Origin: Octopus sinensis
Lineage: Eukaryota
Reading direction: 5' to 3'
Assembly (NCBI RefSeq): GCF_006345805.1
Contig: NC_043023.1
Span: 19,096,001 to 19,160,000, forward strand
DNA length: 64,000 nt
Shown: piece after piece, positions 5,544-54,163 of the stretch
Numbering within the stretch: position 1 is the stretch's first letter
Layout of the letters: every line of letters starts with the position of its first letter
The notes under the pieces: model-generated
The model's database searches: none
Told to the model about the DNA's origin: nothing
Seen by the model: only the letters and a program-made list of their open reading frames with translations
Translations under genes and position numbers: made by a program

Positions 5544-5578
<35 letters not shown>

Positions 5579-28140: not shown

Positions 28141-28175
<35 letters not shown>

Positions 28176-28765
28176 CCCACACACACACACACACACGTAC
28201 ACTGGGCTTCCATTCAGTTTCCATCTACCAGATCCATTCGCAAGGCCTTAGTGAGTCCGAGGAAATAGAAGACACTTGCCCGAGATATATCAAAACAAAA
28301 AGGGGATTTATAAGGTATTCGTAATCAAGAGGAAACACATCTTAAGCTCTTTGTGATTAAAAAATTTCAGTCAAACATTCCATCAAGATATAAAGTTGTG
28401 CTATCAACCTCCCTTAGTTAAGTAGATATGGAAGGTGGGGGTGGGTGCTTTCTGATAAAAATGAACATGGATTCTATCACAAAATTTACTGATTTTCATT
28501 GGTCTGAGTGGATGACAAAAGGACGTTAAATTCTCAATCTGACCATAGGAAATTTCATATTTCACTACACCTTAATGTAAGCTATTCTTTCCCCCTCCTC
28601 TCTTCTCTCTCTCTCTCTCTATATAATATATATAAATATATAATATATATTATTTATATATGCATGTATATATACATGTAGATGTAGGTACGTACATATA
28701 TGTTTGTATGTATGCATATATTTTTATATATATATATATATATTTTTTTTTTTTTTATTTATCTA

Positions 28766-28796
<31 letters not shown>

Positions 28797-28953
28797 TTTA
28801 TCTCCTATATATATATATATATATATATATTTCTATGTTCAATTATTTCCTTTCCGGATGCAATCTGTAAATAGTAACTATTTTTTGTTGTTTTTTTTTA
28901 CTGTTGTACTTTTTCTCTGTCACCCAGCTTTTCTTTTTATTGTTGTTAAACAA

Positions 28954-29380
28954 GGCACAGGAGTGGCTGTGTGGTAAGTAGCTTGTTTACCAACCACATG
29001 GTTCCAGGTTCAGTCCCACTGCATGACACCTTGGGCAAGTGTCTTCTATAGCCTCGGGCCGACCAATGCCTTGTGAGTGGATTTGGTAGACGGAAACTGA
29101 AAGAAGCCCGTCGTATATATGTATATATATGTATATATATATATGCGTGTGTGTGTGTGTTTGTGTGTCTATGTTTGTCCCCCCTAGCATTGCTTGACAA
29201 CCGATGCTGGTGTGTTTATGTCCCCATCACTTAGCAGTTCGGCAAAAGAGACCGATAGAATAAGTACTGGACTTACAAAAGAATAAGTACCGGGGTCGAA
29301 TTGCTCGATTAAAGGCGGTGCTCCAGCATGGCCGCAGTCAAAATGACTGAAACAAGTAAAAGAGTAAAAGGGTAAAAGAG
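28954..29380 (+). mobile_element. SINE family A
   Basis: Paralog of 5376-5799. Confidence 0.88.
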
Positions 29381-29489
29381 TTATACAAGAAAAAAAAAAG
29401 CTCGTCTCTCATGGTTTTAAAACGCTTGCCTTCTTCTTTATATCATCCACAACGTAAAACATTAATGCAAAATAGGTGACCCTCACCTC

Positions 29490-31312: not shown

Positions 31313-31692
31313 ATATATATATCTATGTTCGATTATTTGCTTTCCAGATACAATCGGTAAAAAGTAACTTTTCTTTGTTGTTTTTTTTTACTGTTGTACT
31401 TCTTTTCTCGGTGACCCAGCTTTTCTGTTTATTGTTGTTAAACAAAGTATCTTTATACAAGAAAAAAAACTCGTCTGTCATGGTTTTAAAACGCTTGCCT
31501 TCTTTTTTATATCATCCACAACGTAAAACATTAATGCAAAATAGGTGACCCTGACCTGTGGAATCTTATTTGGCAACTGACGCAAATAATGATCAAAACA
31601 ACTTCTACAACTTTTAAGCAAACTTTTTCAGATTTGTGAACAATCCAGGTGAATGGTTGTATTACTATTTTGTGAATATTTGTGAACAATAC

Positions 31693-36275: not shown

Positions 36276-36876
36276 TTATGCTGTAACCGGTGGATTCTGG
36301 TTTTTCATACAAGATATCCTGCGGGTGACACGGTTCATGATAGAAATGTAAAGACGCCATTTGGGTATGATACAGAAGATTATGAGAAGGATGTTTACAA
36401 GAACAAGTACAGAAACGATGACTACGGCATGGATGGAAGCACTCCGTTGGTTACGACGATGAGGGTTCCGGTTGATCTGAATCAACGGAACAGCCTGCTC
36501 GTGAAATTAACGTGTAAGTGGCTGAGCACTCCACAGACACGTGTACCCTTAACGTAGTTCTCGGGGATATTCAGCGTGACACAGAGAGTGACAAGGCTGG
36601 GTTCCTTTGAAATACAGGTACAACAGAAACAGGAAGTAAGAGTGAGAGAAAGTTGTGGTGAAAGAGTACAGCAGGGATCACCACCATCCCCTGCTGGAGC
36701 CTCGTGGAGCTTTAGGTGTTTTCGCTCAATAAACACTCACAACGCCTGGTCTGGGAATCAAAACCGCAATCCTATGACCGCGAGTCCACTGCCTTAACCA
36801 CTGGGCCATTGCACCTCCACGACTACGGCATAGGTGGATATGCATGTTCCTGATCCATTAGCTTCAAACCCAGTAG
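36276..36876 (-). pseudogene. Duplicate TM/cytoplasmic terminal exon disrupted by a SINE
   Basis: Acceptor TTCATCTTTTGCAG; with the SINE removed it reads TGFEANGSGTCISTYAVVIVSVLVLVNILLIIFCIIPKWRLYISIMNRVTRRISCMKNQNPPVTA*, homologous to 39344-39543. Confidence 0.85.
36431..36820 (-). mobile_element. SINE family C variant inserted in the TM exon
   Basis: 11-bp TSD GACTACGGCAT at 36420-36430 and 36821-36831. Confidence 0.93.
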
Positions 36877-39343
36877 CTGCAAAAGATGAACAAGAAAACA
36901 TATACTTTTTGTATTTAAGCAAAGATAGTAATATCAATAAGGCTGAACCCTTTTGATCCCAACCTGCTCAAAACCACCCTTGTTTTTATTGTATGAATTC
37001 CCTGTTTTGAAGAGATCTAAAGTAAAACCTTCCATCAAGGCTTCAAATAAACTTGTGTTCCAAACACTAGCTTAGTAAGGACGAGGTTATTTCATTGAAT
37101 TCTTTACTATTTCCAAAATTTATTGAAACAAAGGCAATGCATTTCAGCAGAAATATGGTAAGAAAAGGATTAACACACACAATTATCTTAAGACTATTAT
37201 GTCTAACTGATTAAATGACCCCCTTCAGATCAGTCCATCATTTAGAAAGGTTACGTAGTATTAACAAGGGGGACTGACTTCTCAACACAAAAAATGGATG
37301 GTCAACAGATCAGTCCATCATTTACCAGGGGCAGCATATACATTTACCCGTTATTTAAGCATAATTAATTTCCTCGTTATTCAAACAGAAACTGAAACTT
37401 TCTTGTTTATTAAATTAGATGCAAACTCTGCATGAGGCTTCCTAACATTTTTGTGTAATTAAATTTTGTGTATTGGTGTAATTTTTCATGCTGAATCTTA
37501 GGAGATAATTCACTTTTTCCACAAAAATATTAAAATAAGCTTCAGGGCTTTAAAGTTTGATCATTTTTACCCAGTCAGAAAACGGGATTTGGAAGCTGTC
37601 ATTTTGTGCATGGCTGCACATGTTGTGAACTGTAAACAAATGAAATATTGTTGGAATTCTGCTTTATGTATCCCATAAAACCCCTTAAGACATTTTTATT
37701 TTTATTTTTTGGAATCTTCAGAAAATTTTAGTGAATTTGCATTCTACACACAAAAATTCATACAGTTATGCAAACACAAAACAAAATGCATGATTTGAGA
37801 CCTATTTAGCTGTTATTTTTAGCACATCTGATGATCACTTCATACTGCATATGTTTTAAGCATTTGAAAACAGAGAAAAAGAACACATGGTAAGCAACTT
37901 GGCTTGTTGTTATGGAAACAAAAATTGTAGATATTGAAGTGAAAGCCAAGCAGAAATGATCTTAGTTTTACTAATTAATTAAACGACTTCAGTCTAACTT
38001 CACAGGAATTTAGTTTACATCACAGGTAATGGTCGAGCCTGATAAGGTACGATTTTTGACAAGGATTTACGATTGTTTACACAGCAATAAGATTTTTTTT
38101 TCAACAAGTTTCTTCCTACCACTTAGTCTTTCAAATTTTCACCTGATTACTTTTAAAAAAATATAGTTCTGATGTAGTTTTGGATACTGATAATGAAAAT
38201 CACAATCATTATTTCTAAAAACAAATAATAAAAAAGTTACATGCACTTAAAGTTAAGTAATTTTAGCCAATCGAAATCATCCATTGTTCACATATTGCTA
38301 TTGCCATGGAGATTAACACAAACATAACTATTATGTGGTCTCTTGACTTGTTAGAAATAGCTTTCAGAAAAAAATCACATTTTTTGGCAGAAAATTTTGT
38401 CACATCAAATTCCAGTATAAAAAGAATCTACACCATCTGAAGTGGATTTGTAGAAAATTTCCTTAAAAAATATAGACTTTTGTGAAAGTCATTGGAGCAT
38501 TCATGTGTAGATGTGCCCCAGGTATTGTCCCTGGGTGGTTACTATGTGTCATGGTGCATGCATTACCTGAATATCCATAATAAAAATAAATTGTATTCAA
38601 TTATAATCACAGACATATGTGTGTATGGGGGAAGGGGTCTTTGTGTCTGTGTTTGTCCTCCCTCCCCACTACTTGACAACAGGTGTTGGTGGGTTTATGT
38701 CCCTGTAACTTAGCAGTTTCGCAAAAGAGATCAAAAGAATAAGTACAAGGCTTCAATAACAAAAAATTTCTTCCAGGCAGTGCCCCAGTATGGCCATAAA
38801 TTGGGAGTGAAATGTGTTGATAACAATTAGCAACAAGTAGGAAACTACCTGGAGGGTGATCTTTCTGAGGTGGAAACTGTGTGGAAGCCCCTGGTCTATG
38901 TGTGTGTGTGTCTTTGTGTTTGTACCCCCCACCACTTGAGCAGGGTTTTTGAAAAGATGAGGCTAAACCAATGATGATGATGAAGGTGTATATAATATGG
39001 AAGGAATTTAGTAGAAACCAAATATGCTAATGACTTGACTTGACAGCATTCACCCGGGGTGGGCTGAGCTGGCTTCATTCATCCTCAATGCTGCATCTCT
39101 CACAAACGCTGACCAGACCTGGCGATTTGAGGCTCACGACCATGTGATCTCCAACCACTCCTTATTCCAGCAGCAAATGCCATAGATGTGGGGGCCTAGG
39201 TTGGGTTCCAGATCAGCCTTGACTGTCATCAGCCAGGTTTTTCGTTGTCCAATACCCTTCAAATATTCCTCATGTATATCGCAAAATATGCTAAAGCAAT
39301 CATTGAAATTCTATAAGAAAAAAAATCACAAAACATAGCATTC

Positions 39344-39543
39344 TTACGCTGTAGCCGGTGGATTCTTGTATCTCTTGCGAGATATCCACTTGTTGACACG
39401 GTTCCTGATCCAAATGAAAGGTTGGCATTTGAATATGATACAGAAGATTATGAAGATGGCTACAAGACCAAGTACAGAAATGACGACATAGATATGTATG
39501 CTGGTTCTTGATCCATTAGCTTCCAAACCTTTTGTTTCTTCAT
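39344..39543 (-). CDS. Terminal exon: stalk, transmembrane helix and basic cytoplasmic tail of a type-I membrane protein
   Basis: Acceptor TTCATCTTTTGCAG, phase 1; (D)EETKGLEANGSRTSIHIYVVISVLGLVAIFIIFCIIFKCQPFIWIRNRVNKWISRKRYKNPPATA*. Confidence 0.85.
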
Positions 39544-40246
39544 CTGCAAAAGATGAACAAGAAAACATATACTTTTTGTTTTTAAGCAAAGATAGTAATA
39601 TCAATAAGGCTGAACCCTTTTGATCCCAACCTGCTCAAAACCACCCTTGTTTTTATTGTACGAATTCCCTGTTTTAAAGAGATCTAAAGTAAAACCTTCC
39701 ATCAAGGCTTCAAATAAACTTGTGTTCCAAACACTAGCTTAGTAAGGACGAGGTTATTTCATTGAATTCTTTACTATTTCCAAAATTTATTGAAACAAAG
39801 GCAATGCATTTCAACAGAAATATGGTAAGAAAAGGATTAACACACACAATTATCTTAAGACTATTATGTCTAACTGATTAAATGACCCCCTTCAGATCAG
39901 TCCATCATTTAGAAAGGTTACGTAGCATTAACAAGGGGGACTGACTTTTCAACACAAAAGTGGATGGTCAACAGATGAGTCCATCATTTACCAGGGGCAG
40001 CATATACATTTACCCGTTATTTAAGCATAATTAATTTCCTCGTTATTGAAATAGAAACTGAAACTTTCTTATTTATTAAATTAGATGCAAACTCTGCACG
40101 AGGCTTCCTAACATTCTTGTGTAATTAAATTTGGTGGCTCAAACAAAATGTTAACAAATTCTAGCATTGAAAATGGCAGGTGTAAAGAATTGTGAGGTGA
40201 GATAATATTGAGGGTTACGGGGAAGGCAAAAGGGGGTCATTTCAAA

Positions 40247-40642
40247 TCTTTATATATAAATGTGAAGTTGTGTGTCTGTCTCCTACGATTTAGATTCCTA
40301 ACTACTCCCACATTTTGCGGTGCAGTGTAACCAAAAGCAGGTATCTTATAGTCGTGATTCATATCGAGCCCTTCTGGTTATTAGCGCGTGTCTACGATGA
40401 GTCTACGATTTAAAAAAAAATATTACCATCATTTTTTCCCATTTTTAATGCATTATTTTGCTATTATACAAGGGAAGTAACTCTCTAAAAATCGATTATT
40501 AAATCTCAGAACATAAAAAGCTACAGTAACACCCCTCTTTCTGGTTAGCCATATTGAGATGGCTATTATACTTTACATCTCTAAAACTGCTTATATAGTT
40601 ATTTCCCTTACAAACCCGAGCAACGCCGGGCGATACTGCTAG
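40247..40642 (+). mobile_element. Non-autonomous Helitron
   Basis: A|TCTTTATATATAAA...CCCGAGCAACGCCGGG...CTAG|T. Confidence 0.9.
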
Positions 40643-40772
40643 TTGTAAATATATCTGTAAAATAAATATAACCATTATCCTATAAGCTTTCATTAAGCAA
40701 AACGTAAATCTGATGCTAAAATAGATAATTAGTAAATATATATCCTGCAACTGATAGAAGGATTATACAGAA

Positions 40773-41145
40773 CTAGCATTATCGCCTGGCGTTGCTCGGG
40801 TTTGTAAGGGAAATAACTATAAAGCATTTTTAGAGAGTTATAGCCAAAAAATAGAAAAAAAATGAAGGTAAATTTTTTTTGAGAGTTAAAACGGTCGAGT
40901 TGCGTCCCCTAGACAGTCTGTGGTTTGTGTTTCTGATTCTCGACCCCATGTCGAATTTATCGATTTTTTTCAGAACTGGGGGAACTTTTCAAAATTTTCT
41001 CTGCGTTAGTTTTGAATTATGACATTGGGCTATGTGTGTGTCAAGTTTCATCAGAATCAGTTGAAAGCCGTGGTCAGGGTGAGGGTACAACCTGACAGAC
41101 ACACAGAAACACACACAGACAAACTGCCGTTTATATAGAGAGAGA
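40773..41145 (-). mobile_element. Non-autonomous Helitron (same subfamily as 2369-2752)
   Basis: Same termini and internal sequence. Confidence 0.88.
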
Positions 41146-41388
41146 TTGGTAAAGACATTGGTTTATGTCAATTTTTGCTCTTAATAATATTTTTCTCTTT
41201 GAATTCTTCTTTCACAAACTAGAAAATGCCAAATCCTTTCTATAACAATTAAATAGTACAACAGACAGACGATCCTCAAGAACGAAGCTAATTAATCCAT
41301 TCAGTCAACTACAAATATATCCCACCAAGGGTCATAATGAAAACTTCTTAACAGGAAAACAAAAAAAAACTAATTCAGAAGAAACTTT

Positions 41389-42347
41389 GGATCTTTTCGG
41401 TTTGAACGGCAGTTTTTTCGAGCGGTGTCATATGAAATTGTCACCCATAATTATGACCCTAGTATCGATCCATTGCATTTCAATCTGTTTTAGGGTTAGG
41501 GGTGGGGGGAAGGGTATCTTTTTTTCTACAGAAATGTAAATAAACCCAATCTGTTTCTTAAACGAGGGACATATTCATACGGCACAGAATGTTTTTTTTT
41601 TACCTCAATAGACGTGATTGATTGGTTGAAATTGCAGAAATTGAAGAAAAAAAACAACAAATATCTTACAAACAATAGAATTTTCTCAATAAAGCCAAGA
41701 GAAAAAGATATTTTATAAACACATTCTACCAGTATACGAAGTTTAAAAGTGTTCAGTTATGTGGAAATTAATTAAAAAAACTGCCGGTCAAACCGCAAAG
41801 ATCCTATTTCTTAAATGAGGGACATATTCATACGGTGCAGAATGATTTTTTACGTCAATAGATGTGATTGATTGGTTGAAATTGCAGAAATTGAAGAAAA
41901 AAAACAACAAATATCTTACAAACTAGAGAATTTTCTCAATAAAGCCAAGAGAAAAAGATGTTTTATAAACACATTCTACCAGTATACGAAGTTTAAAAGT
42001 GTTTAGTTACCTGGAAATTATGTTAAAAGAACTGCCGGTCAAACCGAAAAGACCCAAATCTCTTACAAACTATAGAATTTTCTCAATAAAGCCAAGAGAA
42101 AAAGATGTTTTATAAACACATTCTACCAGTATACGAAGTTTAAAAGTGTTTAGTTACGTGGAAATTATTTTTAAAAACTGCTGTTCAAACCGACAAGACC
42201 CAAATATCTTACAAACTATAGAATTTTCTCAATAAAACCAAGAGAATAAGATGTTTTATAAACACATTCTACCAGTATACGAAGTTTAAAAGTGTTTAGT
42301 TACCTGGAAATTATGTTAAAAAACTGCCGGTCAAATGGAAAAGATCC
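41389..42347. mobile_element. GGATC-TIR MITE with four tandem right ends
   Basis: AACTGCCGGTCAAACCGAAAAGA-like ends at about 41806, 42055, 42200 and 42347. Confidence 0.82.
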
Positions 42348-42718
42348 AAAATTTTTGTAATTGTTCAGTTACAAACTGTGATTTTGATTAAGTATTAGAA
42401 AAATATTTGCATGATGATGATGACAACGGGGGGGGAGGGGCAACGGCAGCGCGTGAGCTGCCAGAATCCTTTTTATGCTGGATGAAATGCTTAGCAGTTT
42501 TTCAGCTGTTGTCACATTCTGAGTTCAAACTCCACCAAGGTCTTTCATCCTTTCAGGGTCGATAAATTAAGTACCCATTAAACACTGAGGACAAAGTAAT
42601 TGTCCCCGCTCCACAAAATTCAGGCCTTGTACCTATGGCAAGGGTCTTACTATCATCATCATCATCATCGAAGGTGTGAGCTGACAGAACTATTACTGCA
42701 CCAGAAAAAAGGTCCTGT

Positions 42719-43406
42719 GGCGAGCTGGCAGAAACATTAGCACGCCGGGCAAAATGCATAGCCGTGTTTTGTCTGCCGTTATGTTCTGAGTTCAAATTCC
42801 GCCAAGGTGGACTTTGCCTTTCATGCTTTCGGGGTCGATAAATTAAGTACCAGTTACACACTGGGGTTGATGTAATCAGCTTAATACCTATGTCTGTCCT
42901 TGTTTGTCCCCTCTGTCTTTTAGGCCCTTGTGGGTAGTAAAGAAATAGGTATTTCGTCTGCCGCTACATTCATCATCATCATCATCGTTTAACGTCCGTT
43001 TTCTGCGCTAGCACAGGTTGGATGGTTCGACCAGGACCTGGGAAGCCAGGGGCTGCACCAGGCTCCAGTCTGATCTGGCAGTGTTTCTACAGCTGGATGC
43101 CCTTCCTAACGCCAACCACTCTGCGAGTGTAGTGGGTGCTTTTTACGTGCCACCAGCACAGGTGCCAGGGGAGTCTGGCATCGGCCACGATCGGTTGGTG
43201 CTTTTAACGTGCCAAGGCGGCGCTGGCATCGGCCAATTCTGAGTTCAAATTCCGCCAAGGTGGACTTTGCCTTTCATCCTTTCGGGGTCGATAAATTAAG
43301 TGCCAGTTACGCATTGGAGTTGATGTAATCAGCTTAATACCTATGTCTGTCCTTGTTTGTCCCCTCTGTCTTTTAAGCCCTTGTGGGTAGTAAAGAAATA
43401 GGTATT
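42719..43406 (+). mobile_element. SINE family B (head GGCGAGCTGGCAGAA; core GACTTTGCCTTTCATCCTTTCGGGGTCGATAAA) with an RTE-tail element inserted at about 42971-43232
   Basis: Two core-tail units separated by a minus-strand (GAT)n-tailed element. Confidence 0.8.
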
Positions 43407-43606
43407 TTTTTTTTACCCATTAACCCCTGAGTTCAAATACTGCTAAGGTCAGCTTTGCCTTTCATTCCTTTGGGGTTGATGAAATAAAGGACCGACTAAA
43501 TATACTCAAATTAATGGAATTGAGGAACCTCTTCCACATGAAATTCCTGACCTTGCACCAAAATTAGAATTATTATTGTTATTATTAGCAAAAGCGATTT
43601 CCTTAC

Positions 43607-43855
43607 CTTTCATCACCAAAGTATAACTTTCTGAGCAGAAATAGTAGTCACAAAAACTCCAAGTCAAATCTTGTTCAGTGACATTATGGATCAAAAGAGT
43701 TGAGCTGTTACCCTTGTAATGAACTTCATAATTTCCTTTATTCTCACAAGTATCTACACATTGAAGATAATTAAACTCGTTAACCCACAAAACTGGTGTT
43801 CCAATCAAGCTTGATTCGATATGAATAGTAGCATTTTTTCCTAATACAACTGGTG
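43607..43855 (-). CDS. Ig-like domain exon B
   Basis: Acceptor TTTTTATTTCAG, donor G|GTAAGG, 249 nt, phase 1-1; (A)PVVLGKNATIHIESSLIGTPVLWVNEFNYLQCVDTCENKGNYEVHYKGNSSTLLIHNVTEQDLTWSFCDYYFCSESYTLVMK; three N-glycosylation sequons. Confidence 0.85.
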
Positions 43856-44077
43856 CTGAAATAAAAAGGTAAAAGTCAATATTATTGATTTGTTTCCCAT
43901 ATGAAAGATTTCTGTTTTTTTTGTTATTTTTCATCATCATCGCCAATTTAACATTTATTTTTCCCTACTTGGGATCAGAGTTTTCTTTGTGCACAATTGG
44001 ATGCACTTCCTGTCCTAATAGGTACTCGGACTGCATAGGCAGTCCAATATCGCCTCCGCAGGTGGCTGCGGAGGTAA

Positions 44078-44372
44078 TCTTTATATATAAAACTAAAGTT
44101 GTGTGTGTGTCTGTCTACTCCGATTTAGATTCCTAACTACTCCCACATTTTGCGGTGCAGTTTAACCAAAAGCGGGTATCTTATAGTCATGATTCATATC
44201 GAGCCCTTCTGGGTTTTAGCGCGTGTCTACGATGAGTCTACGATTTAAAAAAAAAATTTACGTTCATTTTTCCGCATTATTAACGCATTGTTGCTCAGTT
44301 TATGTAAGGGAAGTAACTCTCTAAAAATGCTTATATAGTTATTTCCCTTACAATGCCGAGCGATACTATTAG
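44078..44372 (+). mobile_element. Non-autonomous Helitron, degenerate 3' end
   Basis: TCTTTATATATAAAA start; matches 40247-40642. Confidence 0.8.
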
Positions 44373-44884
44373 TAGAACATAAAATTCTATCAAGGGTCAT
44401 AGCGACCTTTGACAAGAAAGAGTTTGCTTTCCTCTTCACGGGCCCCAACTTGTCGGTGCAGAGTTGTCTGCAGGTGGCAAGGCAACTTGCTTGGGGGCTC
44501 CGATGAGGAGGATTCACCTTATTTCTATTGATATTTTTGTATTCGAGGGCTTGTTGTGTTCAATTGGATGTTCTTCCTGTCCTAATATCCCAGTTTGTTG
44601 AATAACAAAGAGCCTGGACATGCTTTACCTAGTAAACTGGAAACAAACGACCCCATATAAACGAGCCTTTTGTTTACTAAGATTGTGCAGAGTAAGATAC
44701 ACCCTTGTCACCCATAAAGTTAATCAAGTTGTACAGAAATTTCTATGCCACTGAAACCAGGAAACTGGCCCTTATGAGCCTGGCATCGCTTGAGAAGGAA
44801 ATCAAGTTGTAGTCAGATGTTACAAGCATAAAGGAGAGGCCTTAAATGTGATTGACCAGGTCAAGAAAGTTATAATTAATTAGA

Positions 44885-45123
44885 AACAGAATTAGACTTG
44901 ATGAGATGCAGTTTGATTTTCTGCCAGGAAGAAGGACTACTGCTGCCATCTACTGAGTAAAACAACTTCAGATGTATTTAGCTAAAAAATAAACCATTTC
45001 ACTTGGCATTTGTTGACTTGGAGACAGCTTTTGACAGGATATGGAGATCTCTGAGGAAGCTAGGAGTTGACAAATGGCTTGTGAGGGCTGGATACGCCAT
45101 GTATAGGGGTGCTGTAAGAGTTA
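44885..45123 (+). pseudogene. RTE-clade RT fragment
   Basis: DEMQFDFLPGRRTT..., LAFVDLETAFDR, SLRKLGVDKWLVR. Confidence 0.82.
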
Positions 45124-45137
45124 ATACAGCAGACGAA

Positions 45138-45554
45138 GGTGACGAGCTGGCAGAACCGTTAGCATGCCGGGCGAAATACCTAGCTGTATTTCGTTTGCCG
45201 TTACGTTGTGAGTTCAAATTCCGCCGAGGTCGACTTTGCCTTTCATCATTTCGGGGTCAATAAATTCAGTACCAGTTACGCACTGGGGTCAATATAATCG
45301 ACTTAATACCTTTCTCTGTCCTTGTTTGTCCCTTCTGTGTTTAGCCTCTTGTGGGTAATAAAGAAATAGGTATTTCGTCTGCCGTTATGTTCTGAGTTCA
45401 AATTCCACCAAGGTCAACTTTGCCTTTAATCCTTTCGGGGTCGATAAATTAAGTACCAGTTACACACTGGGGTTGATGTAATCGACTTAATTTGTTTGTC
45501 TGTCCTTGTTTGTCCCCCCTGTGTTTAGCCCCTTGTGGGTAATAAAAAGAAATA
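45138..45554 (+). mobile_element. SINE family B with two tandem core-tail units
   Basis: Head at 45138, units of about 175 bp. Confidence 0.85.
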
Positions 45555-45882
45555 AATACAGCAGTGAATTTAAGTTCCGGTAAGATTTCACCGAGGTTCC
45601 GTTCTCAGTACCTTCCTATTCATCAGTGTGCAGGCACATGGCCTAGTGGCTAGAGTTGGGGACACACAGTCGAGGGATCACGGGTTCGAATCTCAGACTG
45701 GGCGATGTATGTGTTTATGAGCAAAACACCTAAGCTCCACGTTGCTCTGGCAGAAGGTAATGGCAAACTGATCAGAAAAGCAAATAAAAAAGTAACCAAA
45801 AACTCTGAGTTAAGGGAAAGAAACAGAAGACAGAATTGGAAAGACAGTGTCTAGCGTAAAAGGAGTCTGTAAATCCATTTAC

Positions 45883-45921
45883 CATTTTGGGTTATCTTAT
45901 AAATTTCTATTCTTGTCGAAT
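45883..45921 (-). CDS. 39-nt mini-exon (linker and A-strand of Ig-like domain B)
   Basis: Acceptor TTTTCATCTTTTACAG, donor G|GTAAAT, phase 1-1; STRIEIYKITQN joins in frame to APVVLG. Confidence 0.75.
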
Positions 45922-46039
45922 CTGTAAAAGATGAAAACAAAAAAAGATGACAACAAAGAAAAAAGATGAAAACAAAAAAAGATGTGAACAAAAATTTTTG
46001 AGTTTCAGATTTTACATTCAATCAACAGGATTCATCATC

Positions 46040-48120
46040 ATCATCATCATCATCATCGTTTAACGTCCGTTTTCCATGCTAGCATGGGTTGGACGGTTCA
46101 ACTGGGGTCTGGGAAGCCAGGAGACTGCACCAGGCTCTAATCTGATCAGGCAGTGTTTCTACAGCTGGATGCCCTTCCTAATGCCAACCACTCCGTGAGT
46201 GTAGTGGGTGCTTTTTACGTGCCACCGGCACAGGTGCCAGGCGGGGCTGGCAATGGCCATGATCGGATTGGTGCTTTTTACGTTCCACCAACACAGGTGT
46301 CAGGTGAGGCTGGCAATGGCCATGATCGGATTGGTGCTTTTTACGTGCCACCAACACAGGTGTCAGGTGAGGCTGGCAATGGCCATGATCGGATTGGTGC
46401 TTTTTACGTGCCACCAACACAGGTGCCAGGTGAGGCTGGCAATGGCCATGATCGGATTGGTGCTTTTTACGTGCCACCGGCACAGGTGCCAGGTGAGGCT
46501 GGCAATGGCCATGATCGGATTGGTGCTTTTTACGTGCCACCAGCACAGGTGCCAGGCGAGGCTGGCAATGGCCACGATCGGATTGGTGCTTTTTATGTGC
46601 CACCGGCACAGGTGCCAGGCGAGGCTGGCAATGGCCATGATCGGATTGGTGCTTTTTATGTGCCACCGGCACAGGTGCCAGGCGAGGCTAGCAATAGCCA
46701 TGATCGGATTGGTGCTTTTTACGTGCCACCGGCACAGGTGCCAGGCGAGGCTAGCAATGGCCATGATCGGATTGGTGCTTTTTACGTGCCACCAACACAG
46801 GTGCCAGGCGAGGCTGGCAATGGCCATGATCGGATTGGTGCTTTTTATGTGCCACCGGCACAGGTGCCAGGCGAGGCTGGCAATAGCCATGATCGGATTG
46901 GTGCTTTTTACGTGCCACCGGCACAGGTGCCAGGCGAGGCTAGCAATGGCCATGATCGGATTGGTGCTTTTTACGTGCCACGGCACAGGTGCCAGGTGAG
47001 GCTGGCAATGGCCATGATCGGATTGGTGCTTTTTACGTGCCACCAACACAGGTGCCAGGTGAGGCTGGCAATGGCCATGATCGGATTGGTGCTTTTTACG
47101 TGCCACCAACACAGGTGCCAGGTGAGGCTGGCAATGGCCATGATCGGATTGGTGCTTTTTACGTGCCACCGGCACAGGTGCCAGGTGAGGCTGGCAATGG
47201 CCATGATCGGATTGGTGCTTTTTACGTGCCACCAACACAGGTGCCAGGTGAGGCTGGCAATGGCCATGATCGGATTGGTGCTTTTTACGTGCCACCAACA
47301 CAGGTGCCAGGTGAGGCTGGCAATGGCCATGATCGGATTGGTGCTTTTTACGTGCCACCAACACAGGTGCCAGGTGAGGCTGGCAATGGCCATGATCGGA
47401 TTGGTGCTTTTTACGTGCCACCGGCACAGGTGCCAGGTGAGGCTGGCAATGGCCATGATCGGATTGGTGCTTTTTACGTGCCACCAACACAGGTGCCAGG
47501 TGAGGCTGGCAATGGCCATGATCGGATTGGTGCTTTTTACGTGCCACCAACACAGGTGCCAGGTGAGGCTGGCAATGGCCATGATCGGATTGGTGCTTTT
47601 TACGTGCCACCAACACAGGTGCCAGGTGAGGCTGGCAATGGCCATGATCGGATTGGTGCTTTTTACGTGTCACCAACACAGGTGCCAGGTGAGGCTGGCA
47701 ATGGCCATGATCGGATTGGTGCTTTTTACGTGCCACCAACACAGGTGCCAGGCGAGGCTGGCAATGGCCATGATTGGATTGGTGCTTTTTACGTGCCACC
47801 AACACAGGTGCCAGGCGAGGCTGGCAATGGCCACGATCAGATGGTGCTTTTTAGGTGCCACCAGCACAGGTGCCAGGCGAGGCTGGCAATGGCCATGATT
47901 GGATTGGTGCTTTTTACGTGCCACCAACACAGGTGCCAGGCGAGGCTGGCAATGGCCATGATCGGATTGGTGCTTTTTACGTGCCACCACACAGGTGCCA
48001 GGCGAGGCTGGCAATGGCCATGATTGGATTGGTGCTTTTTACATGCTACCAACACGGAGGCCAGCTGACCCGGCGCTGGCAACGACCACGTTCTGATGGT
48101 CCTCTTACGTGCCACCGGCA
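46040..48120 (-). mobile_element. RTE-tail SINE-like element with a large internal VNTR
   Basis: (CAT)n at 46035-46060 is the reverse complement of the (GAT)n tail; body matches 7490-7660 and 42971-43232. Confidence 0.8.
46210..48045. repeat. 63-bp minisatellite, about 29 copies
   Basis: Unit GTGCCAGGTGAGGCTGGCAATGGCCATGATCGGATTGGTGCTTTTTACGTGCCACCAACACAG; 21-aa periodicity in the ORF track. Confidence 0.95.
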
Positions 48121-48172
48121 CTGGTATCACAACTACAATTTCCAAAAGTATCATTATAATTCATTTCCTTAC

Positions 48173-48417
48173 TGTTTATTTTCAGATGAAATATCCCTCC
48201 TTCGACGTTGTCGTCTAGAATTTCCAAGTCAAACATTTGTTAGTTATTCTCCTCATCCAAAGAGAAGACTTGTTGCCACTCTGACTCACTTGAAATTCAG
48301 TACCTTTGGCACATGATCTATCGCACTCGTATCTCTTATTGCCACAATACCACACAGCCGGTCTCTTCATGTTTTCAATTTCAATAGAGAGGGTGGCACT
48401 TCCTCCGAGTATTTCCC
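48173..48417 (-). CDS. Ig-like domain exon A (245 nt; one base missing near 48215-48222)
   Basis: Acceptor TTTCTTTATTTCAG, donor A|GTAAGG; (G)EILGGSATLSIEIENMKRPAVWYCGNKRYECDRSCAKGTEFQVSQSGNKSSLWMRRITNKCLTWKF, then in the shifted frame DDNVEGGIFHLKIN; clearly homologous to exon B. Confidence 0.8.
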
Positions 48418-48845
48418 CTGAAATAAAGAAATCAAGATGTTTACTTCCTAGTTACATGGGTCCAGGTTCAGTCTCACTTAGTGGCACCTTGGGCAAGGGC
48501 GTGCCACTATAGTCTTAGGACAACCAAGGCCTTGTGAGCAGATTTGGTAGGTGGAAACTGAAAGAAGACTGTCGTGTGTCTGCATGTGTGTGAGTGTGTC
48601 AGTGTATGTGCGTGGTTGTGTGTGTTTCAGCAAAGCAGTTCAGCAAAGGAGACCAACAAAATAAGTTCCAGACTGAGGTCAATTCATTTGACTAAAAATT
48701 CTTCAAGGTAGTGCCCCAGCATGGCCATAGTCTAATGACTGAAACAAGCAAGTGACCATCATGCTTGAATGGATCAGAGTTTTCATTTGTAACAGTAGGA
48801 TGCTCTTCCTGCCACTAACCTCCATCTGTTTCCCAGTCTATAGAT

Positions 48846-49064
48846 CAGTGGTTTTCAACCAGGGTTCCGCAGAACCTTAGGGTTCCACCAGTACAGTCCA
48901 GGGGTTCCGCAAGAAGTTACAATACTGCTAAAATTGGCAGTGATTTTTAATTCTCCTGTGCAGATATGTGTGCATAAGACAATTAAATTATTGCACAGGG
49001 GTTCCTCGAGCCAGTGGAATGTTTCCTTGGGGTTCCGCTCCAGCAAAAAGGTTGAAAAGCCCTG
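48846..49064. mobile_element. hAT-type MITE
   Basis: TIRs CAGTGGTTTTCAACC / GGTTGAAAAGCCCTG; 8-bp TSD CTATAGAT/CTATAGAA. Confidence 0.82.
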
Positions 49065-49347
49065 CTATAGAATAACAAACAGCCTGGATATGTTTTATGC
49101 AGGGAACTGGGAACAAACGACACCGTATAAATGGGCCTTTTGTTTACTAAGATTGTGCAACACAACAAGATTTTGTGGTGAACTTCAAGCAAATGACATC
49201 GCTGGGAAAACCATATTGTTGCAAGTAGCCATCTTTAAATAAGGGGCCAATTTGTGGTGACTGGCAATATGATGTAATGTCGTATTGCCGAAGAAATATC
49301 ATTGTCGTTTTTCCATTGGTTAATATAACTGCTCATATAAGGATTCT

Positions 49348-49635
49348 GTGGAGGCGCAATGGCCTAGTGGTTAGGGCAGCGGACTCGCGGTCGCAGGATT
49401 GCGGTTTCGATTCCCAGACCGGGCGTTGTATGTGTTTATTGAGCGAAAACACCCAAAAAGCTCCACGAGGCTCCGGCAGGGGTGGTGATCTCTGCTGTAC
49501 TCTTTCACCACTCTTTCTTCTGTCGGCCTGCTCGCTTAGCCAGCGGGGTGGCGTCATTCGAAGGCTAAAACAATGTGAACGCATTGTGACCAGCGATGTG
49601 TAACAACATCTGATGGTCTGGTCGGTCACGTGATA
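49348..49635 (+). mobile_element. SINE family C, full length
   Basis: A box TGGCCTAGTGG, B box GTTTCGATTCC, tail CACGTGAT. Confidence 0.88.
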
Positions 49636-49876
49636 TAAAGATTCTAAAAGTTACTTACAGAATATTGGTATGTAATTTCGATTCTTTAAAGTCAAGTTGA
49701 GCAGTTATAAAAACCCGGGATTTTGGGATGTAATTAAACCCCACGACACTCACTCCTTTGAGACATTGGGGATTTTTCATGCCATGTCCAAGGAAAATCC
49801 AACAATATAGTAAAATAAGTTTGTGGCATATTTTAACTTCTAAAACACCATATCTACCCAGTGCTGCCCTCTAGTG

Positions 49877-50546
49877 CAATGGTTCTCAACCATTCTTCAC
49901 CTATGGACCCCTTTGTTTCCTATTATACTCAGGTGGACCCTTATAACCATTTCTGGTTTAAAACATCCTAGTATATTCTTATAATCAAATATTTTGGATC
50001 TTTTTAGTTTGAACGGCAGTTTTTTCTAGCGGTGTCATATGAAATTGTCACTCATAATTATGACCCTAGTATCGATCTATTGCATTTCAATCTGTTTTAG
50101 GGTTAGGGGTGGGGGAAGGTATCTTTTTTTTCTTCACAAATGTAAATAAACCCAATCTGTTTTTTAAACGAGGGACATTTTCATACGGCACAGAATGTTT
50201 TTTACCTCAATGGACGTCATTGATTGGTTGAAATTGCAGAAATTGAAGAAAAACAACAAATATCATACAAACTATAGAATTTTCTCAATAAAGCCTAGAG
50301 AAAAAGATGTTTTATAAACACATTCTTCCAGTATACGAAGTTTAAAAGTGTTTAGTTACCTAGAAATTATTTTTAAAAACTGCCGGTCAAACCGAAAAGA
50401 TCCAATATTTTTAGGAATTATATAACAAAATTGTTAAAATATTTTGTGTACTGTAAAAATATAACCCATTAATTGTACATAAATTTTAACAACAAAATCC
50501 TATGTGGACCCCCAACAGCCATATTGACCCCGGTTAAAAACCACTA
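49877..50546. mobile_element. hAT-type MITE containing a nested GGATC MITE
   Basis: Degenerate TIRs CAATGGTTCTCAACC / GGTTAAAAACCACTA; TSD CTCTAGTG/TTCTAGTG. Confidence 0.7.
49996..50403. mobile_element. Complete GGATC-TIR MITE, Merlin-like termini
   Basis: TIR of about 30 bp starting GG; 8-bp TSD AATATTTT; empty site near 51600 in the tandem paralog. Confidence 0.85.
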
Positions 50547-50840
50547 TTCTAGTGGATTCCCCGATGAGTGATTCTGGCTCATTAGCCTTTATCAATGGGA
50601 AACTCCAGAGAAAGATAAACCTGAGCAGATTCAAAGCTGTTGTTTTATCTAAAGAGCAGTCACTATCAGTGACTGAGTTGTGCTAGTGAACTGCCTGGTC
50701 GGAATAAATGTTTTAAGAAATCAAAAAACACAAATGAAACAGTGAATAAAATTTATGAGTTGAGTTAAAGAAATAGAAGAGAGAATTGAAAAAGTTGTGT
50801 CTAGTTTAGAAGGCGAAAGGGGATAAGGTAATCCACTTAC

Positions 50841-50897
50841 CACTTTGGGTGAAATTTTTAACTCCTTCTGATCTCAAATCGTTTGCACTTGCCAAAT
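50841..50897 (-). CDS. 57-nt mini-exon, copy 2
   Basis: Acceptor TATTCATCTTCCACAG, donor G|GTAAGT, phase 1-1; LASANDLRSEGVKNFTQS. Confidence 0.75.
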
Positions 50898-52039
50898 CTG
50901 TGGAAGATGAATACAAGGACTTTTGAATTTCAGATTTTACATTCGATCAACAAGATTGTTTCCTATTTCTGTTACAATAATTAAATAGTAATTAACACGA
51001 GTAGATCTAATTACACATTATATATTGTACCACTGGTATGTTACTCCATACTCCTATTAGCAATAATCTACATAAACCTAACTTATACACTTAATCTAAG
51101 AAGCTCACACTTATGAACCTTTCAGAAAATATACGCGTGATGAGTTTTTCGTACTTACCAGCACTAAGTTATTTAAATGCACCCGAGCACTAAACATACT
51201 AGTCTGGCACACTACCCCCACCATAGCCTCTATGTCACGCTGGTGAGACCCATATATTTTATAATTATTGGTGCTACCTTGTTCATGGCTACTGTTTCTA
51301 GGATCCATGTTTCCAGGATTATTATTATTATTATTATTGTTATTTGTGCCCTAAGAGTGAAACTGCCAATCATAAGTAATCCCTCTTTAGTTAAAATATG
51401 TTTGTGACATATTTTAACTTCTAAAGGCAAATTTACTGCATTTACCAAAGAGAAGGATTTCTCACTGATGGTAAAAGGTGTGAAAACACCATATCTGCCC
51501 AGTGCTTACCTATAACACAATGCAACCCTTTTGATTTCTATTTCACTCAGGTGGACCCTTATAACCATTTTATGTTTTAAAAAATCCTATTTTTATAATT
51601 AAATATTATTAGGAATTGTATTTAAAAAACTGATTAAAAATTTGGTGTACTGTAAAGCTAAAACCAATTAATTGTACATAAATTTTAACAACAAAATCCT
51701 ATATGGACCCCCAACAGCCATACTGACCCCGGTTAAAAACCACTATTCTAGTGGATTCCCCGATGAGTGATTCTGGCTCATTGGCCTTTATCAATGGGAA
51801 ACTCCAGAGAAAGATAAACCTGAGCAGATTCAAAGCTGTTGTTTTATCTAAAGAGCAGTCACTATCAGTGACTGAGTTGTGCTAGTGAACTGCCTGGTTG
51901 GAATAAATGTTTTAAGAAATCAAAAAACACAAATGAAACAGTGACTAAAACCTATGAGTTAAGTAAAAGAAATAGAAGAGAGATTTGAAAAAGTTGTGTC
52001 TAGTTTAGAAGGCGAAAGGGGATAAGGTAATCCACTTAC

Positions 52040-52096
52040 CACTTTGGGTGAAATTTTTAACTCCTTCTGATCTCAAATCATTTGGACTTGCCAAAT
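52040..52096 (-). CDS. 57-nt mini-exon, copy 1
   Basis: Acceptor TATTCATCGTCCACAG, donor G|GTAAGT, phase 1-1; LASPNDLRSEGVKNFTQS. Confidence 0.75.
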
Positions 52097-52440
52097 CTGT
52101 GGACGATGAATACAAGGACTTTTGAATTTCAGATTTTACATTCGATCAACAAGATTGTTTCCTATTCTGTTACGATAATTAAATAGTAATTAACACGAGT
52201 AGATCTAATTACACATTATATACTGTACCACTGGTATGTTACTCCATACTCCTATTAGCAATAATCTACATAAACCTAACTTATACACTTAATCTAAGAA
52301 GCTCACACTTATGAACCTTTCAGAAAATATACGCGTGATGAGTTTTTCGTACTTACCAGCACTACGTTATTTAAATGCACCCGAGCACTAAACATACTAG
52401 TCTAGCACACTACCCCCACCATAGCCTCTATGTCACGCTG

Positions 52441-52935
52441 GGATTCATGCCTCTTCTCCTTATCTCCTCAAAGACATACATCATCTCGAAAGAGTCCAGA
52501 AGCCGGCTACCCGCATGGTTCTTGGTCTCAAGCATTTGTCTTATGAAGAAACGCTGAAGACACTTGACCTTTATTCTCTAGAAAAACGACGACGCCATGG
52601 TGATCTCATTCTCGCTCACAACATCATAAGCGGAAAGTGTAACCTCTCGAAAGAGCTGTTCTTCACTCCGGCTCCAGAGCGTCGGCTGCAGGGTCACTCC
52701 GAAAAGCTCTATCTACGATGATTTCATCTCAATCAAAGGAGAGGAGCTTTCTCCGTCCGGGTTGCGGATCTGTGGAATAAGCTGCCGGACGAGATAGTGA
52801 AGATGCCGACGACCGCTCGGTTCAAAGTCTCTCTTGACCAGAAAAGGCCTGAACTCTTTGCATGAACACCACCCTGTACATAACTCCATGTCCCCCTACA
52901 TGGCCTTGCGCTTTTTGAACCAATAAAAATTGAAT
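52441..52935 (+). mobile_element. 3' fragment of a third CR1-group LINE
   Basis: MVLGLKHLSYEETLKTLDLYSLEKRRRHGDLI...FSVRVADLWNKLP. Confidence 0.88.
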
Positions 52936-52947
52936 CGAATAACCCCC

Positions 52948-52984
<37 letters not shown>

Positions 52985-53219
52985 CTTATATACAATTAGA
53001 TATATATTATAGCTAAACTACCCATAGTTGATACATTTACCTAAACACAAACACCCCCAACTGCATCTAGAACTGATATAGTTTCTTCCCTAAGACCAAA
53101 ATAGAGCACCCCTTTTAACTACACCCAAACAAGACCATTTTAGATGAAAATAATGGTAATATGAATGAGATTAAAGAAATGAGTAATTATCTTAACGAAA
53201 TTACATGAATTAAATTATA

Positions 53220-53592
53220 GGCGCAGGAGTGGCTTGTTTACCAACCACATGGTTCCGGGTTCAGTCCCACTGCGTGGCACCTTGGGCAAGTGTCTTCTAC
53301 TACAGCCTAGAGCCGACCAATGCCCTGTGAGTGGATTTGGTAGACGGAAACTGAAAGAAGCCCGTCGTATATATGTATATATATATGTTTGTGTGTCTGT
53401 CCCCCTAGCATTGCTTGACAACCGATGCTGGTGTGTTTACGTCCCTGTCACTTAGCGGTTCGGCAAAAGAGACCGTTAGAATAAGTACTGGGCTTACAAA
53501 GAATAAGTCCCGGGGTCGATTTGCTCGACTAAAGGCGGTGCTCCAGCATGGCCACAGTCAAATGACTGAAACAAGTAAAAGAGTAAAGAGTA
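53220..53592 (+). mobile_element. SINE family A
   Basis: Head-spacer-tail with a small deletion in the head. Confidence 0.88.
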
Positions 53593-53667
53593 TGAGAGAT
53601 AAAATGAAAATTATATTTTGGAGGGGACATTTTCAGTGGTTAGTTAATGAAATCAAGCTGTTAGTAA

Positions 53668-53957
53668 TGACCCCCTTCGGTCAGACACTGACCATGGGTT
53701 TGCACCTAGAGAGTTACCCTCTGAGGCACAAGTCTGGGCAAGGTTGTTTTATGGAAGACCAGCAGTCGCCCATGCATACCGGCCTCCCCTCTCCGATACA
53801 GCAACTCATCGCAACTCATTTCTACAGCTGAGTGAACTGAAACATCGTGAAATAAAGTGTCTTGCTCAAGAACACAACACGCAGCCCGGTCCGGGATTCG
53901 AGCTCACAAACTCACGATCATAAGCTCGACGCTCTAACCACTGAGCCACGCGCCTTC
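53668..53957 (-). mobile_element. tRNA-derived SINE family D
   Basis: 13-bp TSD AAGCTGTTAGTAA (53655-53667, 53958-53970); minus-strand TGGCTCAGTGG A box and GCTCGAATCCC B-box-like motif. Confidence 0.88.
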
Positions 53958-54121
53958 AAGCTGTTAGTAAATAATATATTTAAAGTGTTAATGGCGAATG
54001 AAGTCAAGGAGTGGAAAAGAATGAGATGAATCGTAGCTTCGCTTCTCAAGATTGTTTGGAGGAGGAATGGGATGTTAGCAGAAAAAAAGCAAAAATAAAG
54101 CAAAAACGGAAGAAAACTTAC

Positions 54122-54163
54122 AAAAGCACCATGAAAACAAAAAGATCAACTTAAAGGGTCCAT
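54122..54163 (-). CDS. 42-nt signal-peptide exon
   Basis: Acceptor TATTTTTCAG, donor T|GTAAGT, phase 1-1; xGPFKLIFLFSWCF joins in frame to YLASP/YLASA. Confidence 0.7.

What the first reader, a model, noticed from the sequence alone, without database searches (positions are those of the whole stretch)
39344..54163. Hidden gene for a two-domain, atypical Ig-like cell-surface receptor
Six or seven phase-1 GT-AG exons splice in frame, given one restored base in exon A: xGPFKLIFLFSWCFYLASPNDLRSEGVKNFTQS[DLASANDLRSEGVKNFTQS]GEILGGSATLSIE...AVW...ECDRSC...GNKSSLWMRRITNKCLTWKFxDDNVEGGIFHLKINNSTRIEIYKITQNAPVVLGKNATIHIE...VLW...QCVDTC...GNSSTLLIHNVTEQDLTWSFCDYYFCSESYTLVMKDEETKGLEANGS..TM..basic tail*. 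The layout is signal peptide, two tandem domains of about 95 aa, TM helix and short tail, with several N-glycosylation sequons. The domains show V-set-like cues (TQ..., G..ATL/I, central Trp, S.L.I..VT..D). They lack the canonical B-strand Cys and the YxC motif, and share a CxxxC pair instead. I do not recognise the family. It may be a lineage-specific immune, adhesion or sensory receptor in a locus undergoing exon-level duplication. The Ig-fold assignment is an inference.
Basis: partly seen in the sequence, partly recalled or inferred. Interest (0 to 1): 0.9.

Follow-up and report, generated by a model that had tools for sequence, protein, structure and literature searches.

The report
Octopus-only divergent Ig-like membrane protein gene
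The exons are real and encode a membrane glycoprotein with two unusual immunoglobulin-like domains. It belongs to an uncharacterised gene family found only in octopuses, and the gene is already in RefSeq, truncated at this locus by two single-base gaps.

Summary
Seven GT-AG, phase-1 exons on the minus strand (54163 to 39344) encode a signal peptide, two ~96-aa domains, a stalk, a TM helix and a short basic tail.

The window is Octopus sinensis chromosome CM016885.1 (about 19.10-19.16 Mb). The gene is RefSeq LOC115225279, so it is not unannotated. RefSeq calls only a 186/178-aa product starting at an internal ATG, because this copy lacks one base in each of two short homopolymers: A2 instead of A3 in exon 1, and T2 instead of T3 in exon 3. 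A 98-99 % identical unplaced contig, a third contig and the O. vulgaris ortholog all carry the intact 290-299-aa ORF.

The Ig fold is supported:
- AlphaFold2 gives pLDDT 92.5, and all top Foldseek hits are Ig V/I domains.
- hhalign against obscurin I-set domains gives 93.6 % probability.
- Pfam stays below threshold.

The canonical B-F cysteines are replaced by Ile/Phe. A CxxxC insertion is invariant, and a covarying C-F cysteine pair appears in its place.

An exhaustive search found relatives only in octopods (three Octopus species and Argonauta) with 1-4 such domains, several on the same chromosome. Function is untested; the most likely role is a cell-surface recognition or adhesion receptor. 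No paper found describes the family.

The parts
54122..54163 (-). Exon 1: start codon and signal peptide. The frame is broken by a 1-nt shorter A-run (AA at 54151-54152; intact copies have AAA).
52040..52096 (-). Exon 2a (57 nt, phase 1-1): LASPNDLRSEGVKNFTQS, the A-strand/linker segment of domain 1.
50841..50897 (-). Exon 2b: tandem duplicate of exon 2a (DLASANDLRSEGVKNFTQS). Both copies are included in the annotated intact proteins.
48173..48417 (-). Exon 3 (245 nt): the body of Ig-like domain 1. The frame is broken by a 1-nt shorter T-run (TT at 48219-48220; intact copies have TTT). The RefSeq CDS for this locus starts at the out-of-frame ATG at 48236.
45883..45921 (-). Exon 4 (39 nt): NSTRIEIYKITQN, the A-strand segment of domain 2.
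43607..43855 (-). Exon 5 (249 nt): the body of Ig-like domain 2. It is 100 % identical in the haplotig and 99.2 % identical in O. vulgaris.
39344..39543 (-). Exon 6: stalk, TM helix and basic tail. It either ends at TAA (39344-39346) or is spliced at the GC|GT donor after 39348. An alternative acceptor 24 nt inside the exon gives isoform X2.
36864..36876 (-). Last coding piece of the RefSeq model (adds YWV and the stop). It uses the acceptor of the duplicated TM exon, read out of frame.
36279..36876 (-). E6': a second, diverged copy of the stalk/TM/tail exon. It is disrupted by a 390-nt interspersed repeat (36431-36820) flanked by an 11-nt target-site duplication.
46207..48055 (.). 63-nt x 29.4 tandem array inside the intron between exons 3 and 4. 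It is not coding for this gene.

Best explanation
This is Octopus sinensis gene LOC115225279, a single-pass type I membrane glycoprotein. Its ectodomain is two tandem, highly divergent immunoglobulin-like (I-set-like) domains.

Each domain is encoded by a short exon plus a long exon, both phase 1-1. The usual buried B-F disulfide is replaced by hydrophobic residues (Ile and Phe). The fold is presumably braced instead by an invariant CxxxC in a 6-residue insertion after strand C', by a covarying Cys pair joining strand C to the E-F/F region in 'A-type' domains such as domain 1, and by an F-G hairpin pair in 'B-type' domains such as domain 2.

The gene belongs to an uncharacterised multigene family seen only in octopods. 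Members carry 1-4 such domains on a stalk, a TM helix and a short conserved tail (P-P-Y-I-W-I-K-x-R-V-x-x-W-I-S...Y-x-N-P-P). The family grows by exon and cassette duplication.

Inferred, not shown: the protein sits on the cell surface, binds a ligand or counter-receptor through the membrane-distal domain, and acts through its conserved juxtamembrane helix or YxN motif, or through a partner protein.

The two 1-nt homopolymer gaps that break the ORF in this chromosome copy are more likely uncorrected long-read assembly errors than a true null allele. The data here cannot settle that.
For: - Identity of the locus. The window is 100 % identical to CM016885.1, and the spliced window exons translate exactly to XP_029652077.1.
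- Intact copies. These exist on contig VCDQ01005414.1, on VCDQ01005282.1 and in O. vulgaris OX597842.1. They differ from the window in coding sequence by the two homopolymer bases plus 2 to 8 substitutions across E1-E5.
- Fold. AF2 on a 31-sequence domain alignment gives pLDDT 92.5 and pTM 0.84. The top 50 Foldseek PDB hits are all Ig V/I-set domains, with TM 0.48-0.73. The full-length model shows a signal helix, two beta domains, a TM helix and a juxtamembrane helix, and it matches titin Ig tandems, scFvs and basigin. hhalign against obscurin Ig domains gives 93.6 % probability, E = 2e-7, with the C-strand Trp aligned and the B-strand Cys replaced by Ile.
- Cysteine covariation. For C38/C75, both are present in 15 domains, one only in 4, neither in 12. 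C45 is invariant and C49 is present in 30 of 31.
- Family. There are 34 representatives among 1.84 billion proteins. All non-generic hits that were looked up are octopod. One member lies on an intronless contig from an octopus metatranscriptome.
- Selection and errors. Between the window and the haplotig, exons are depleted in substitutions (2 observed, 6.8 expected, P = 0.034) but not in 1-nt indels (2 observed, 2.3 expected). Most 1-nt indels between the two lie in homopolymers.
Against: - No expression, localisation or binding data for this gene were available. No paper mentions any family member.
- No domain reaches the Pfam Ig gathering score: 19.9 bits against 23.7. PDB sequence hits are not significant, E >= 0.02.
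- The disulfide pattern is inferred from covariation, not from coordinates.
- The frameshifts could be real. The window is the only one of four sequences carrying them, and reads were not available.
- The RefSeq models are computational predictions.
Confidence: 0.8

Rival explanations
1. The chromosome copy in the window is a genuine null allele or young pseudogene. Both 1-nt deletions are real, and only the haplotig allele or the paralogous locus makes full-length protein.
For: The window is the sole outlier at both sites among four sequences. Two independent frame breaks fall within 889 coding nt. The family shows birth-and-death features, namely a dead TM exon E6' with a repeat insertion and variable exon copy numbers.
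Against: Apart from these two gaps, the window differs from the haplotig in coding sequence only by two substitutions in E4, so there is no other sign of decay. Both changes are 1-nt homopolymer length changes. They occur at the same density as the 84 1-nt indels seen over 32 kb between the two haplotypes, an indel-to-substitution ratio of about 0.5 that is high for true polymorphism.
Confidence: 0.35
2. It is not a gene. The frames are chance open stretches or exon-like debris from repeats in a repeat-rich region.
For: The region is dense in interspersed and tandem repeats. The ORF is broken twice.
Against: Seven exons all have consensus splice sites and the same phase. Exon identity to O. 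vulgaris (mostly 99-100 %) exceeds that of the surrounding DNA (about 97.4 %). There are 34 related protein clusters and a confident fold. A family member occurs as a spliced transcript.
Confidence: 0.02
3. It is an intracellular muscle or cytoskeletal I-set protein fragment related to obscurin, titin or twitchin, not a surface protein.
For: The only non-octopod sequence matches are obscurin and other multi-Ig giants. Obscurin I-set domains are among the fold hits.
Against: The protein has an N-terminal hydrophobic leader, one 23-residue TM segment followed by a basic stretch, 9 N-x-S/T sequon matches and an even number of conserved cysteines in most domains (4 in 20 of 31). Per-domain scores against obscurin are at most 14.6 bits, which indicates generic Ig similarity.
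Confidence: 0.03
4. The main products are secreted or soluble forms, made by donor read-through after domain 2 or by alternative 3' cassettes. The TM form is minor.
For: RefSeq LOC115228040 (P0007) and several representatives (P0012, P0035, P0038) end in the read-through peptide GKEI..NNNNNNS, which is identical to the window's intron after exon 5.
Against: Those models may simply be truncated predictions on short contigs. TM cassettes are conserved across paralogs and species.
Confidence: 0.1

Closest known systems
RefSeq uncharacterised proteins LOC115225279, LOC115231405, LOC115228040 and LOC118762043 (O. sinensis) and CAI9744052.1 (O. vulgaris)
   Same: LOC115225279 is this very locus, with an exact translation match for the annotated part. 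The others are an allele or very recent duplicates and the ortholog, sharing the same exons and 97-100 % exon identity.
   Different: At this locus the annotation starts inside exon 3 in the shifted frame, so the signal peptide and domain 1 are missing. The O. vulgaris ortholog has a different TM/tail cassette: 80 % nt identity in the exon against 98 % in its upstream flank.
Octopod paralogs with 1-4 domains (for example LOC115225115 with 4 domains, LOC115229017, LOC115225372, O. bimaculoides LOC106867739, and the Argonauta hians protein GAB1602944.1)
   Same: They share the domain (W36, C45xxxC49, W78-x-F80-x-D82), the signal peptide, stalk, TM and short-tail layout, and the chromosome for several members.
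   Different: Domain number and type differ: A-type only, or A-type followed by a B-type membrane-proximal domain. Some carry a second, unrelated Cys-rich module. Overall identity is 28-58 %.
Immunoglobulin I-set domains (Pfam PF07679; obscurin, titin, myotilin)
   Same: They share the beta-sandwich fold, the C-strand Trp and the E-strand L-x-I-x-x-V-T-x-x-D motif. hhalign probability is 93.6 %.
   Different: There is no B-F cysteine pair. A 6-residue CxxxC insertion follows C'. The score is below the Pfam gathering cut-off. The protein is extracellular, glycosylated and membrane-anchored rather than sarcomeric.
Two-Ig type I adhesion and recognition receptors of vertebrates (CD2/SLAM, JAM/CAR, basigin type)
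   Same: The architecture is the same: signal peptide, two Ig-like domains, TM and a short tail. CD2 domain 1 also lacks the canonical disulfide (from general knowledge). CD2 is the top PDB sequence hit and basigin is among the fold hits.
   Different: No significant sequence relationship was found (E = 0.02). The cysteine framework and tail motif differ. This is a resemblance of design, not demonstrated homology.

Membership tests
Immunoglobulin superfamily, I-set-like domain | Seven- to nine-stranded Greek-key beta sandwich | tested here: met
   AF2 gives pLDDT 92.5 and pTM 0.84, with 7 strands. All top 50 Foldseek PDB hits are Ig V/I domains. The two-domain model matches titin tandems and scFvs.
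Immunoglobulin superfamily, I-set-like domain | Significant profile match to curated Ig models | tested here: inconclusive
   hhalign against obscurin I-set domains gives 93.6 % probability, E = 2e-7. Pfam I-set scores 19.9 bits against a gathering score of 23.7. Only 5 of 31 domains hit I-set, all sub-threshold.
Immunoglobulin superfamily, I-set-like domain | Invariant Trp in strand C | tested here: met
   W36 is invariant in 31 domains and aligns with the obscurin Trp.
Immunoglobulin superfamily, I-set-like domain | Canonical Cys(B)-Cys(F) disulfide and the D-x-G-x-Y-x-C motif | tested here: not met
   The B-strand position is Ile or another hydrophobic residue. The F strand reads W-x-F (W78, F80 near-invariant). 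Placing F80 at the canonical Cys position is my inference, because the hhalign alignment stops at column 76.
Immunoglobulin superfamily, I-set-like domain | Domain bounded by phase-1 introns | tested here: met
   All introns are phase 1. Unusually, each domain is split into a 39-57-nt exon and a 245-249-nt exon.
Ig V-set | Extra C' and C'' strands, length about 110 aa | tested here: inconclusive
   The best fold hits are VL domains and nanobodies. However, the domain is 96 aa and the model shows only 7 strands of three or more residues.
Octopod LOC115231405-like family (unnamed) | Signal peptide, 1-4 domains with W...ECDxTC...TWxFxD, stalk, TM and short tail | tested here: met
Obscurin/titin-type sarcomeric Ig proteins | Cytoplasmic giant protein with no leader and no TM | tested here: not met
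   A leader helix, a TM helix and 9 N-x-S/T sequon matches are present.
CD2/SLAM- or JAM-type adhesion receptors | Demonstrable sequence homology | tested here: not met
   The best PDB profile hit is CD2 at E = 0.021, which is not significant.
CD2/SLAM- or JAM-type adhesion receptors | Homophilic or heterophilic binding at cell contacts | not testable with these tools
   This needs binding and cell-aggregation assays.

The most novel reading that the evidence does not exclude
The family is an octopod invention: a fast-evolving, chromosome-clustered set of non-canonical Ig receptors. It diversifies by duplicating domain exons and swapping TM/tail cassettes, and it serves lineage-specific recognition, such as innate immune or self/non-self sensing, or contact-dependent recognition in skin, suckers or the nervous system. 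This would be comparable in spirit to other invertebrate Ig expansions.
Probability: 0.2. Interest if true: 0.6.

Novelty: new variant of a known kind. Interest (0 to 1): 0.35.

Why it matters
Octopods have no antibody-based immunity, and their known large surface-protein expansion is the protocadherins. A second, octopod-restricted family of membrane Ig-like proteins would be a candidate set for recognition functions in immunity, skin and suckers, or neural wiring. The family has a re-engineered cysteine framework and modular exon duplication. It escapes Pfam Ig models, so domain-based surveys miss it. Practically, the result also corrects an annotation: LOC115225279 is called as a truncated protein because of two homopolymer gaps that are probably assembly errors.

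Tried and rejected
- Pfam on the spliced protein and on 31 domains gave only sub-threshold I-set and Ig_3 hits.
- PDB sequence searches with the protein and with the domain profile gave nothing significant. The best hit was CD2 at E = 0.02.
- The word-indexed homolog search with the domain profile returned only 2 proteins, far fewer than the exhaustive search, so it was uninformative for distribution.
- tblastn of all family domains and tails against the window found no second family gene in the 64 kb, only the dead TM exon copy.
- I considered an internal intron in exon 3 (GTGAGT...TTCTAG) as a way round the frame break. I rejected it because it would delete the most conserved part of the domain (reading of the sequence).
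- ARAGORN and Rfam found nothing in the window, so the repeat inserted in E6' could not be typed.
- Six literature searches, on LOC identifiers and on octopus Ig topics, found no description of the family.
- Exact look-up of P0008 on contigs failed.


Full report
**What is in the sequence.** The quoted peptides all lie on the minus strand. I placed seven exons:

| Exon | Coordinates | Length |
|---|---|---|
| E1 | 54122-54163 | 42 nt |
| E2a | 52040-52096 | 57 nt |
| E2b | 50841-50897 | 57 nt |
| E3 | 48173-48417 | 245 nt |
| E4 | 45883-45921 | 39 nt |
| E5 | 43607-43855 | 249 nt |
| E6 | 39344-39543 | 200 nt |

Every exon follows a pyrimidine tract plus AG and is followed by GTAAG or GTAAA. 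Every intron is phase 1. Domain 1 (E2+E3) and domain 2 (E4+E5) are 30 % identical over 83 residues, E = 3e-13.

**Where the window comes from, and whether the gene is hidden.** A protein search with the spliced product returned only Octopus proteins. Fetching the contig that encodes XP_029652077.1 gave a locus 100 % identical to window 58236-26864. The window is therefore Octopus sinensis GCA_006345805.1, chromosome CM016885.1, about 19,096,001-19,160,000.

Splicing window 48236-48173, 45921-45883, 43855-43607, 39543-39348 and 36876-36864 reproduces that RefSeq protein exactly: LOC115225279 isoform X1, 186 aa. Isoform X2 uses an acceptor 24 nt inside E6. So the locus is annotated, but only from an internal ATG in a shifted frame within E3.

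**The frame defects.**
- E1 begins with ATG, but the window reads ATGGACCCTTTAAGTTG.
- E3 is 245 nt, not a multiple of 3, and reads TGGAAATTCTAG.

Three other sequences each carry one more base at both sites, AAA and TTT:
- the unplaced contig VCDQ01005414.1, collinear with the window at 98-99 % identity over 32 kb;
- the contig VCDQ01005282.1;
- the syntenic O. vulgaris region OX597842.1, about 97.4 % identical.

They give MDPLKLIFLFSWCF... and ...TWKFLDDNV..., and intact proteins of 299, 244 and 290 aa. No upstream ATG exon is needed.

Between the window and the 32-kb haplotig alignment there are 247 substitutions and 84 one-base indels, most of them in homopolymers. Exons are depleted in substitutions (2 observed, 6.8 expected, P = 0.034) but not in one-base indels (2 observed, 2.3 expected). 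That contrast fits residual long-read assembly error better than a decaying allele. I put it at roughly 60:40, and only reads can settle it.

**Fold.**
- Pfam gives only a sub-threshold I-set hit: 19.9 bits against 23.7.
- An exhaustive phmmer search of 1.84 billion representatives with the intact allele found 34 proteins.
- From these I cut 31 non-redundant domain instances to make alignment A1.
- AlphaFold2 on A1 gave an all-beta model with pLDDT 92.5 and pTM 0.84.
- All 50 best Foldseek matches in the PDB are Ig variable or I-set domains, including obscurin I-set 2edw. TM-scores are 0.48-0.73, E about 4e-4.
- hhalign of A1 against ten obscurin Ig domains gave 93.6 % probability, E = 2e-7. 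The C-strand Trp is aligned, the B-strand Cys is replaced by Ile, and the CxxxC lies in a 6-residue insertion after C'.
- The obscurin and 'Ig-like domain' giants in the phmmer list score through many weak, in-register domain hits of at most 14.6 bits each.
- The full-length model of the intact allele shows a leader helix (3-16), a disordered stretch that covers the duplicated E2 peptide, two beta domains with pLDDT about 90, a disordered stalk, a TM helix (245-267) and a juxtamembrane helix (272-289). It matches titin Ig tandems, scFvs and basigin.
- Hydropathy gives one strong TM peak, and there are 9 N-x-S/T sequon matches.

The Ig-fold inference is therefore well supported. Strict Pfam membership is not met.

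**Cysteine framework.**
- In A1, W36 and C45 are invariant.
- E44, C49, V57, S64, W78, F80, D82 and L92 are at least 90 % conserved.
- C38 (two residues after the Trp) and C75 (three before W78) covary: both present in 15 domains, one only in 4, neither in 12. This suggests a C-to-F-region disulfide in 'A-type' domains such as domain 1.
- 'B-type' domains such as domain 2 instead carry C81 and C86 in the F-G hairpin.
- These pairings are inferred from covariation. I had no access to model coordinates.

**The family.**
- Named members are all octopod: O. sinensis, O. vulgaris, O. bimaculoides and Argonauta hians.
- Twelve representatives were not looked up but closely resemble these.
- No squid, cuttlefish, nautilus or other mollusc protein appeared at E < 1e-3.
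- Architectures range from one to four domains. A-type repeats are membrane-distal, and in some members a B-type domain is membrane-proximal.
- Several genes share the window's chromosome: LOC115225372 about 57 kb from the window start, and others at 12.28 and 5.52 Mb.
- One member sits on a 1,067-nt intronless contig from run SRR3401912, which a paper identifies as an octopus metatranscriptome. Family members are therefore transcribed and spliced.
- The best O. bimaculoides match is only about 48 % identical, which suggests fast turnover.

**Exon-level dynamics.**
- E2 lies in a roughly 1.2-kb tandem duplication: 51602-52441 against 50404-51243, 96 % identical. One related contig has a single copy.
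- The intron upstream of E6 is duplicated at 36877-37470 (97.5 %).
- The second stalk/TM/tail exon (E6', 36279-36876) is split by a 390-nt interspersed repeat with an 11-nt target-site duplication.
- The RefSeq model splices E6 to the E6' acceptor out of frame, adding only YWV.
- In O. vulgaris the TM/tail exon at the orthologous place is 80 % identical in nucleotides, while its upstream flank is 98 % identical. The cassette has been exchanged or converted.
- Tails of paralogs share P-P-Y-I-W-I-K-x-R-V-x-x-W-I-S...Y-x-N-P-P.

**How it most likely works.**
- Shown: gene structure, homologs, fold and topology features.
- Inferred: the protein is a glycosylated type I surface protein whose membrane-distal domain binds a ligand or counter-receptor. 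The conserved Trp/Arg-rich juxtamembrane helix and the Y-x-N motif are the likely points of coupling to the cell interior. pYxN is the known Grb2-SH2 preference; this comes from general knowledge and is speculative here.
- Whether the role is immune, adhesive or sensory cannot be decided. No paper found mentions any member.

**Verdict.** The gene is already in RefSeq as an uncharacterised protein, truncated at this locus by two probably artefactual one-base gaps. It represents a divergent, octopod-restricted variant of the Ig superfamily. This is of moderate interest mainly as an undescribed lineage-specific receptor family and as an annotation correction.

Noticed in passing
window 46207-48055: A GC-rich 63-nt tandem array of 29.4 copies (96 % matches) sits in the intron between exons 3 and 4. 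The array is longer in the haplotig contig L002. Its long open frames on the minus strand are repeat artefacts.
   Followed up: partly
window 50404-51243 and 51602-52441: A roughly 1.2-kb tandem duplication (96.3 % identical) carries exon 2, giving E2a and E2b. Both copies are spliced into the annotated intact proteins, while contig L003 has only one copy.
   Followed up: partly
window 36279-37470 vs 39344-40136: The stalk/TM/tail exon and its upstream intron are duplicated (intron 97.5 % identical). The downstream copy is broken by a 390-nt interspersed repeat (36431-36820) with the target-site duplication ATGCCGTAGTC. Other partial copies of that repeat lie at about 25596-25901, 2872-3056, 26541-26725 and 49348-49518.
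   Followed up: yes
L004 (O. vulgaris OX597842.1) 23429-23607 vs window 39344-39543: The TM/tail exon is only 80 % identical in nucleotides between the two species, while the adjacent upstream intron is 98 % identical. This suggests cassette replacement or gene conversion from a paralog.
   Followed up: partly
window ~3200-7335 and ~26864-31321: A roughly 4-kb segment is duplicated in the same orientation at 94-96 % identity. Each copy holds about 425-nt units (for example 5917-6339, 29500-29924, 30616-31048) that form a long tandem array in O. vulgaris (L004 30192-32313).
   Followed up: no
protein P0036 (XP_036358517.1, O. sinensis): A protein named 'zinc finger protein 239-like' carries C2H2 fingers followed by one domain of this family. 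This is probably a fused gene model.
   Followed up: no
proteins P0023, P0027, P0028, P0033, P0037: Some family members have one A-type domain followed by a different Cys-rich module of about 90 aa (KPKIE...C...CS.P.T.I.C...) before the TM segment. The Argonauta hians member is of this type.
   Followed up: no
CM016885.1 19,024,184-19,038,375 (L008): The two-domain paralog LOC115225372 lies about 57 kb from the window start on the same chromosome. Further members lie at 12.28 Mb and 5.52 Mb.
   Followed up: partly
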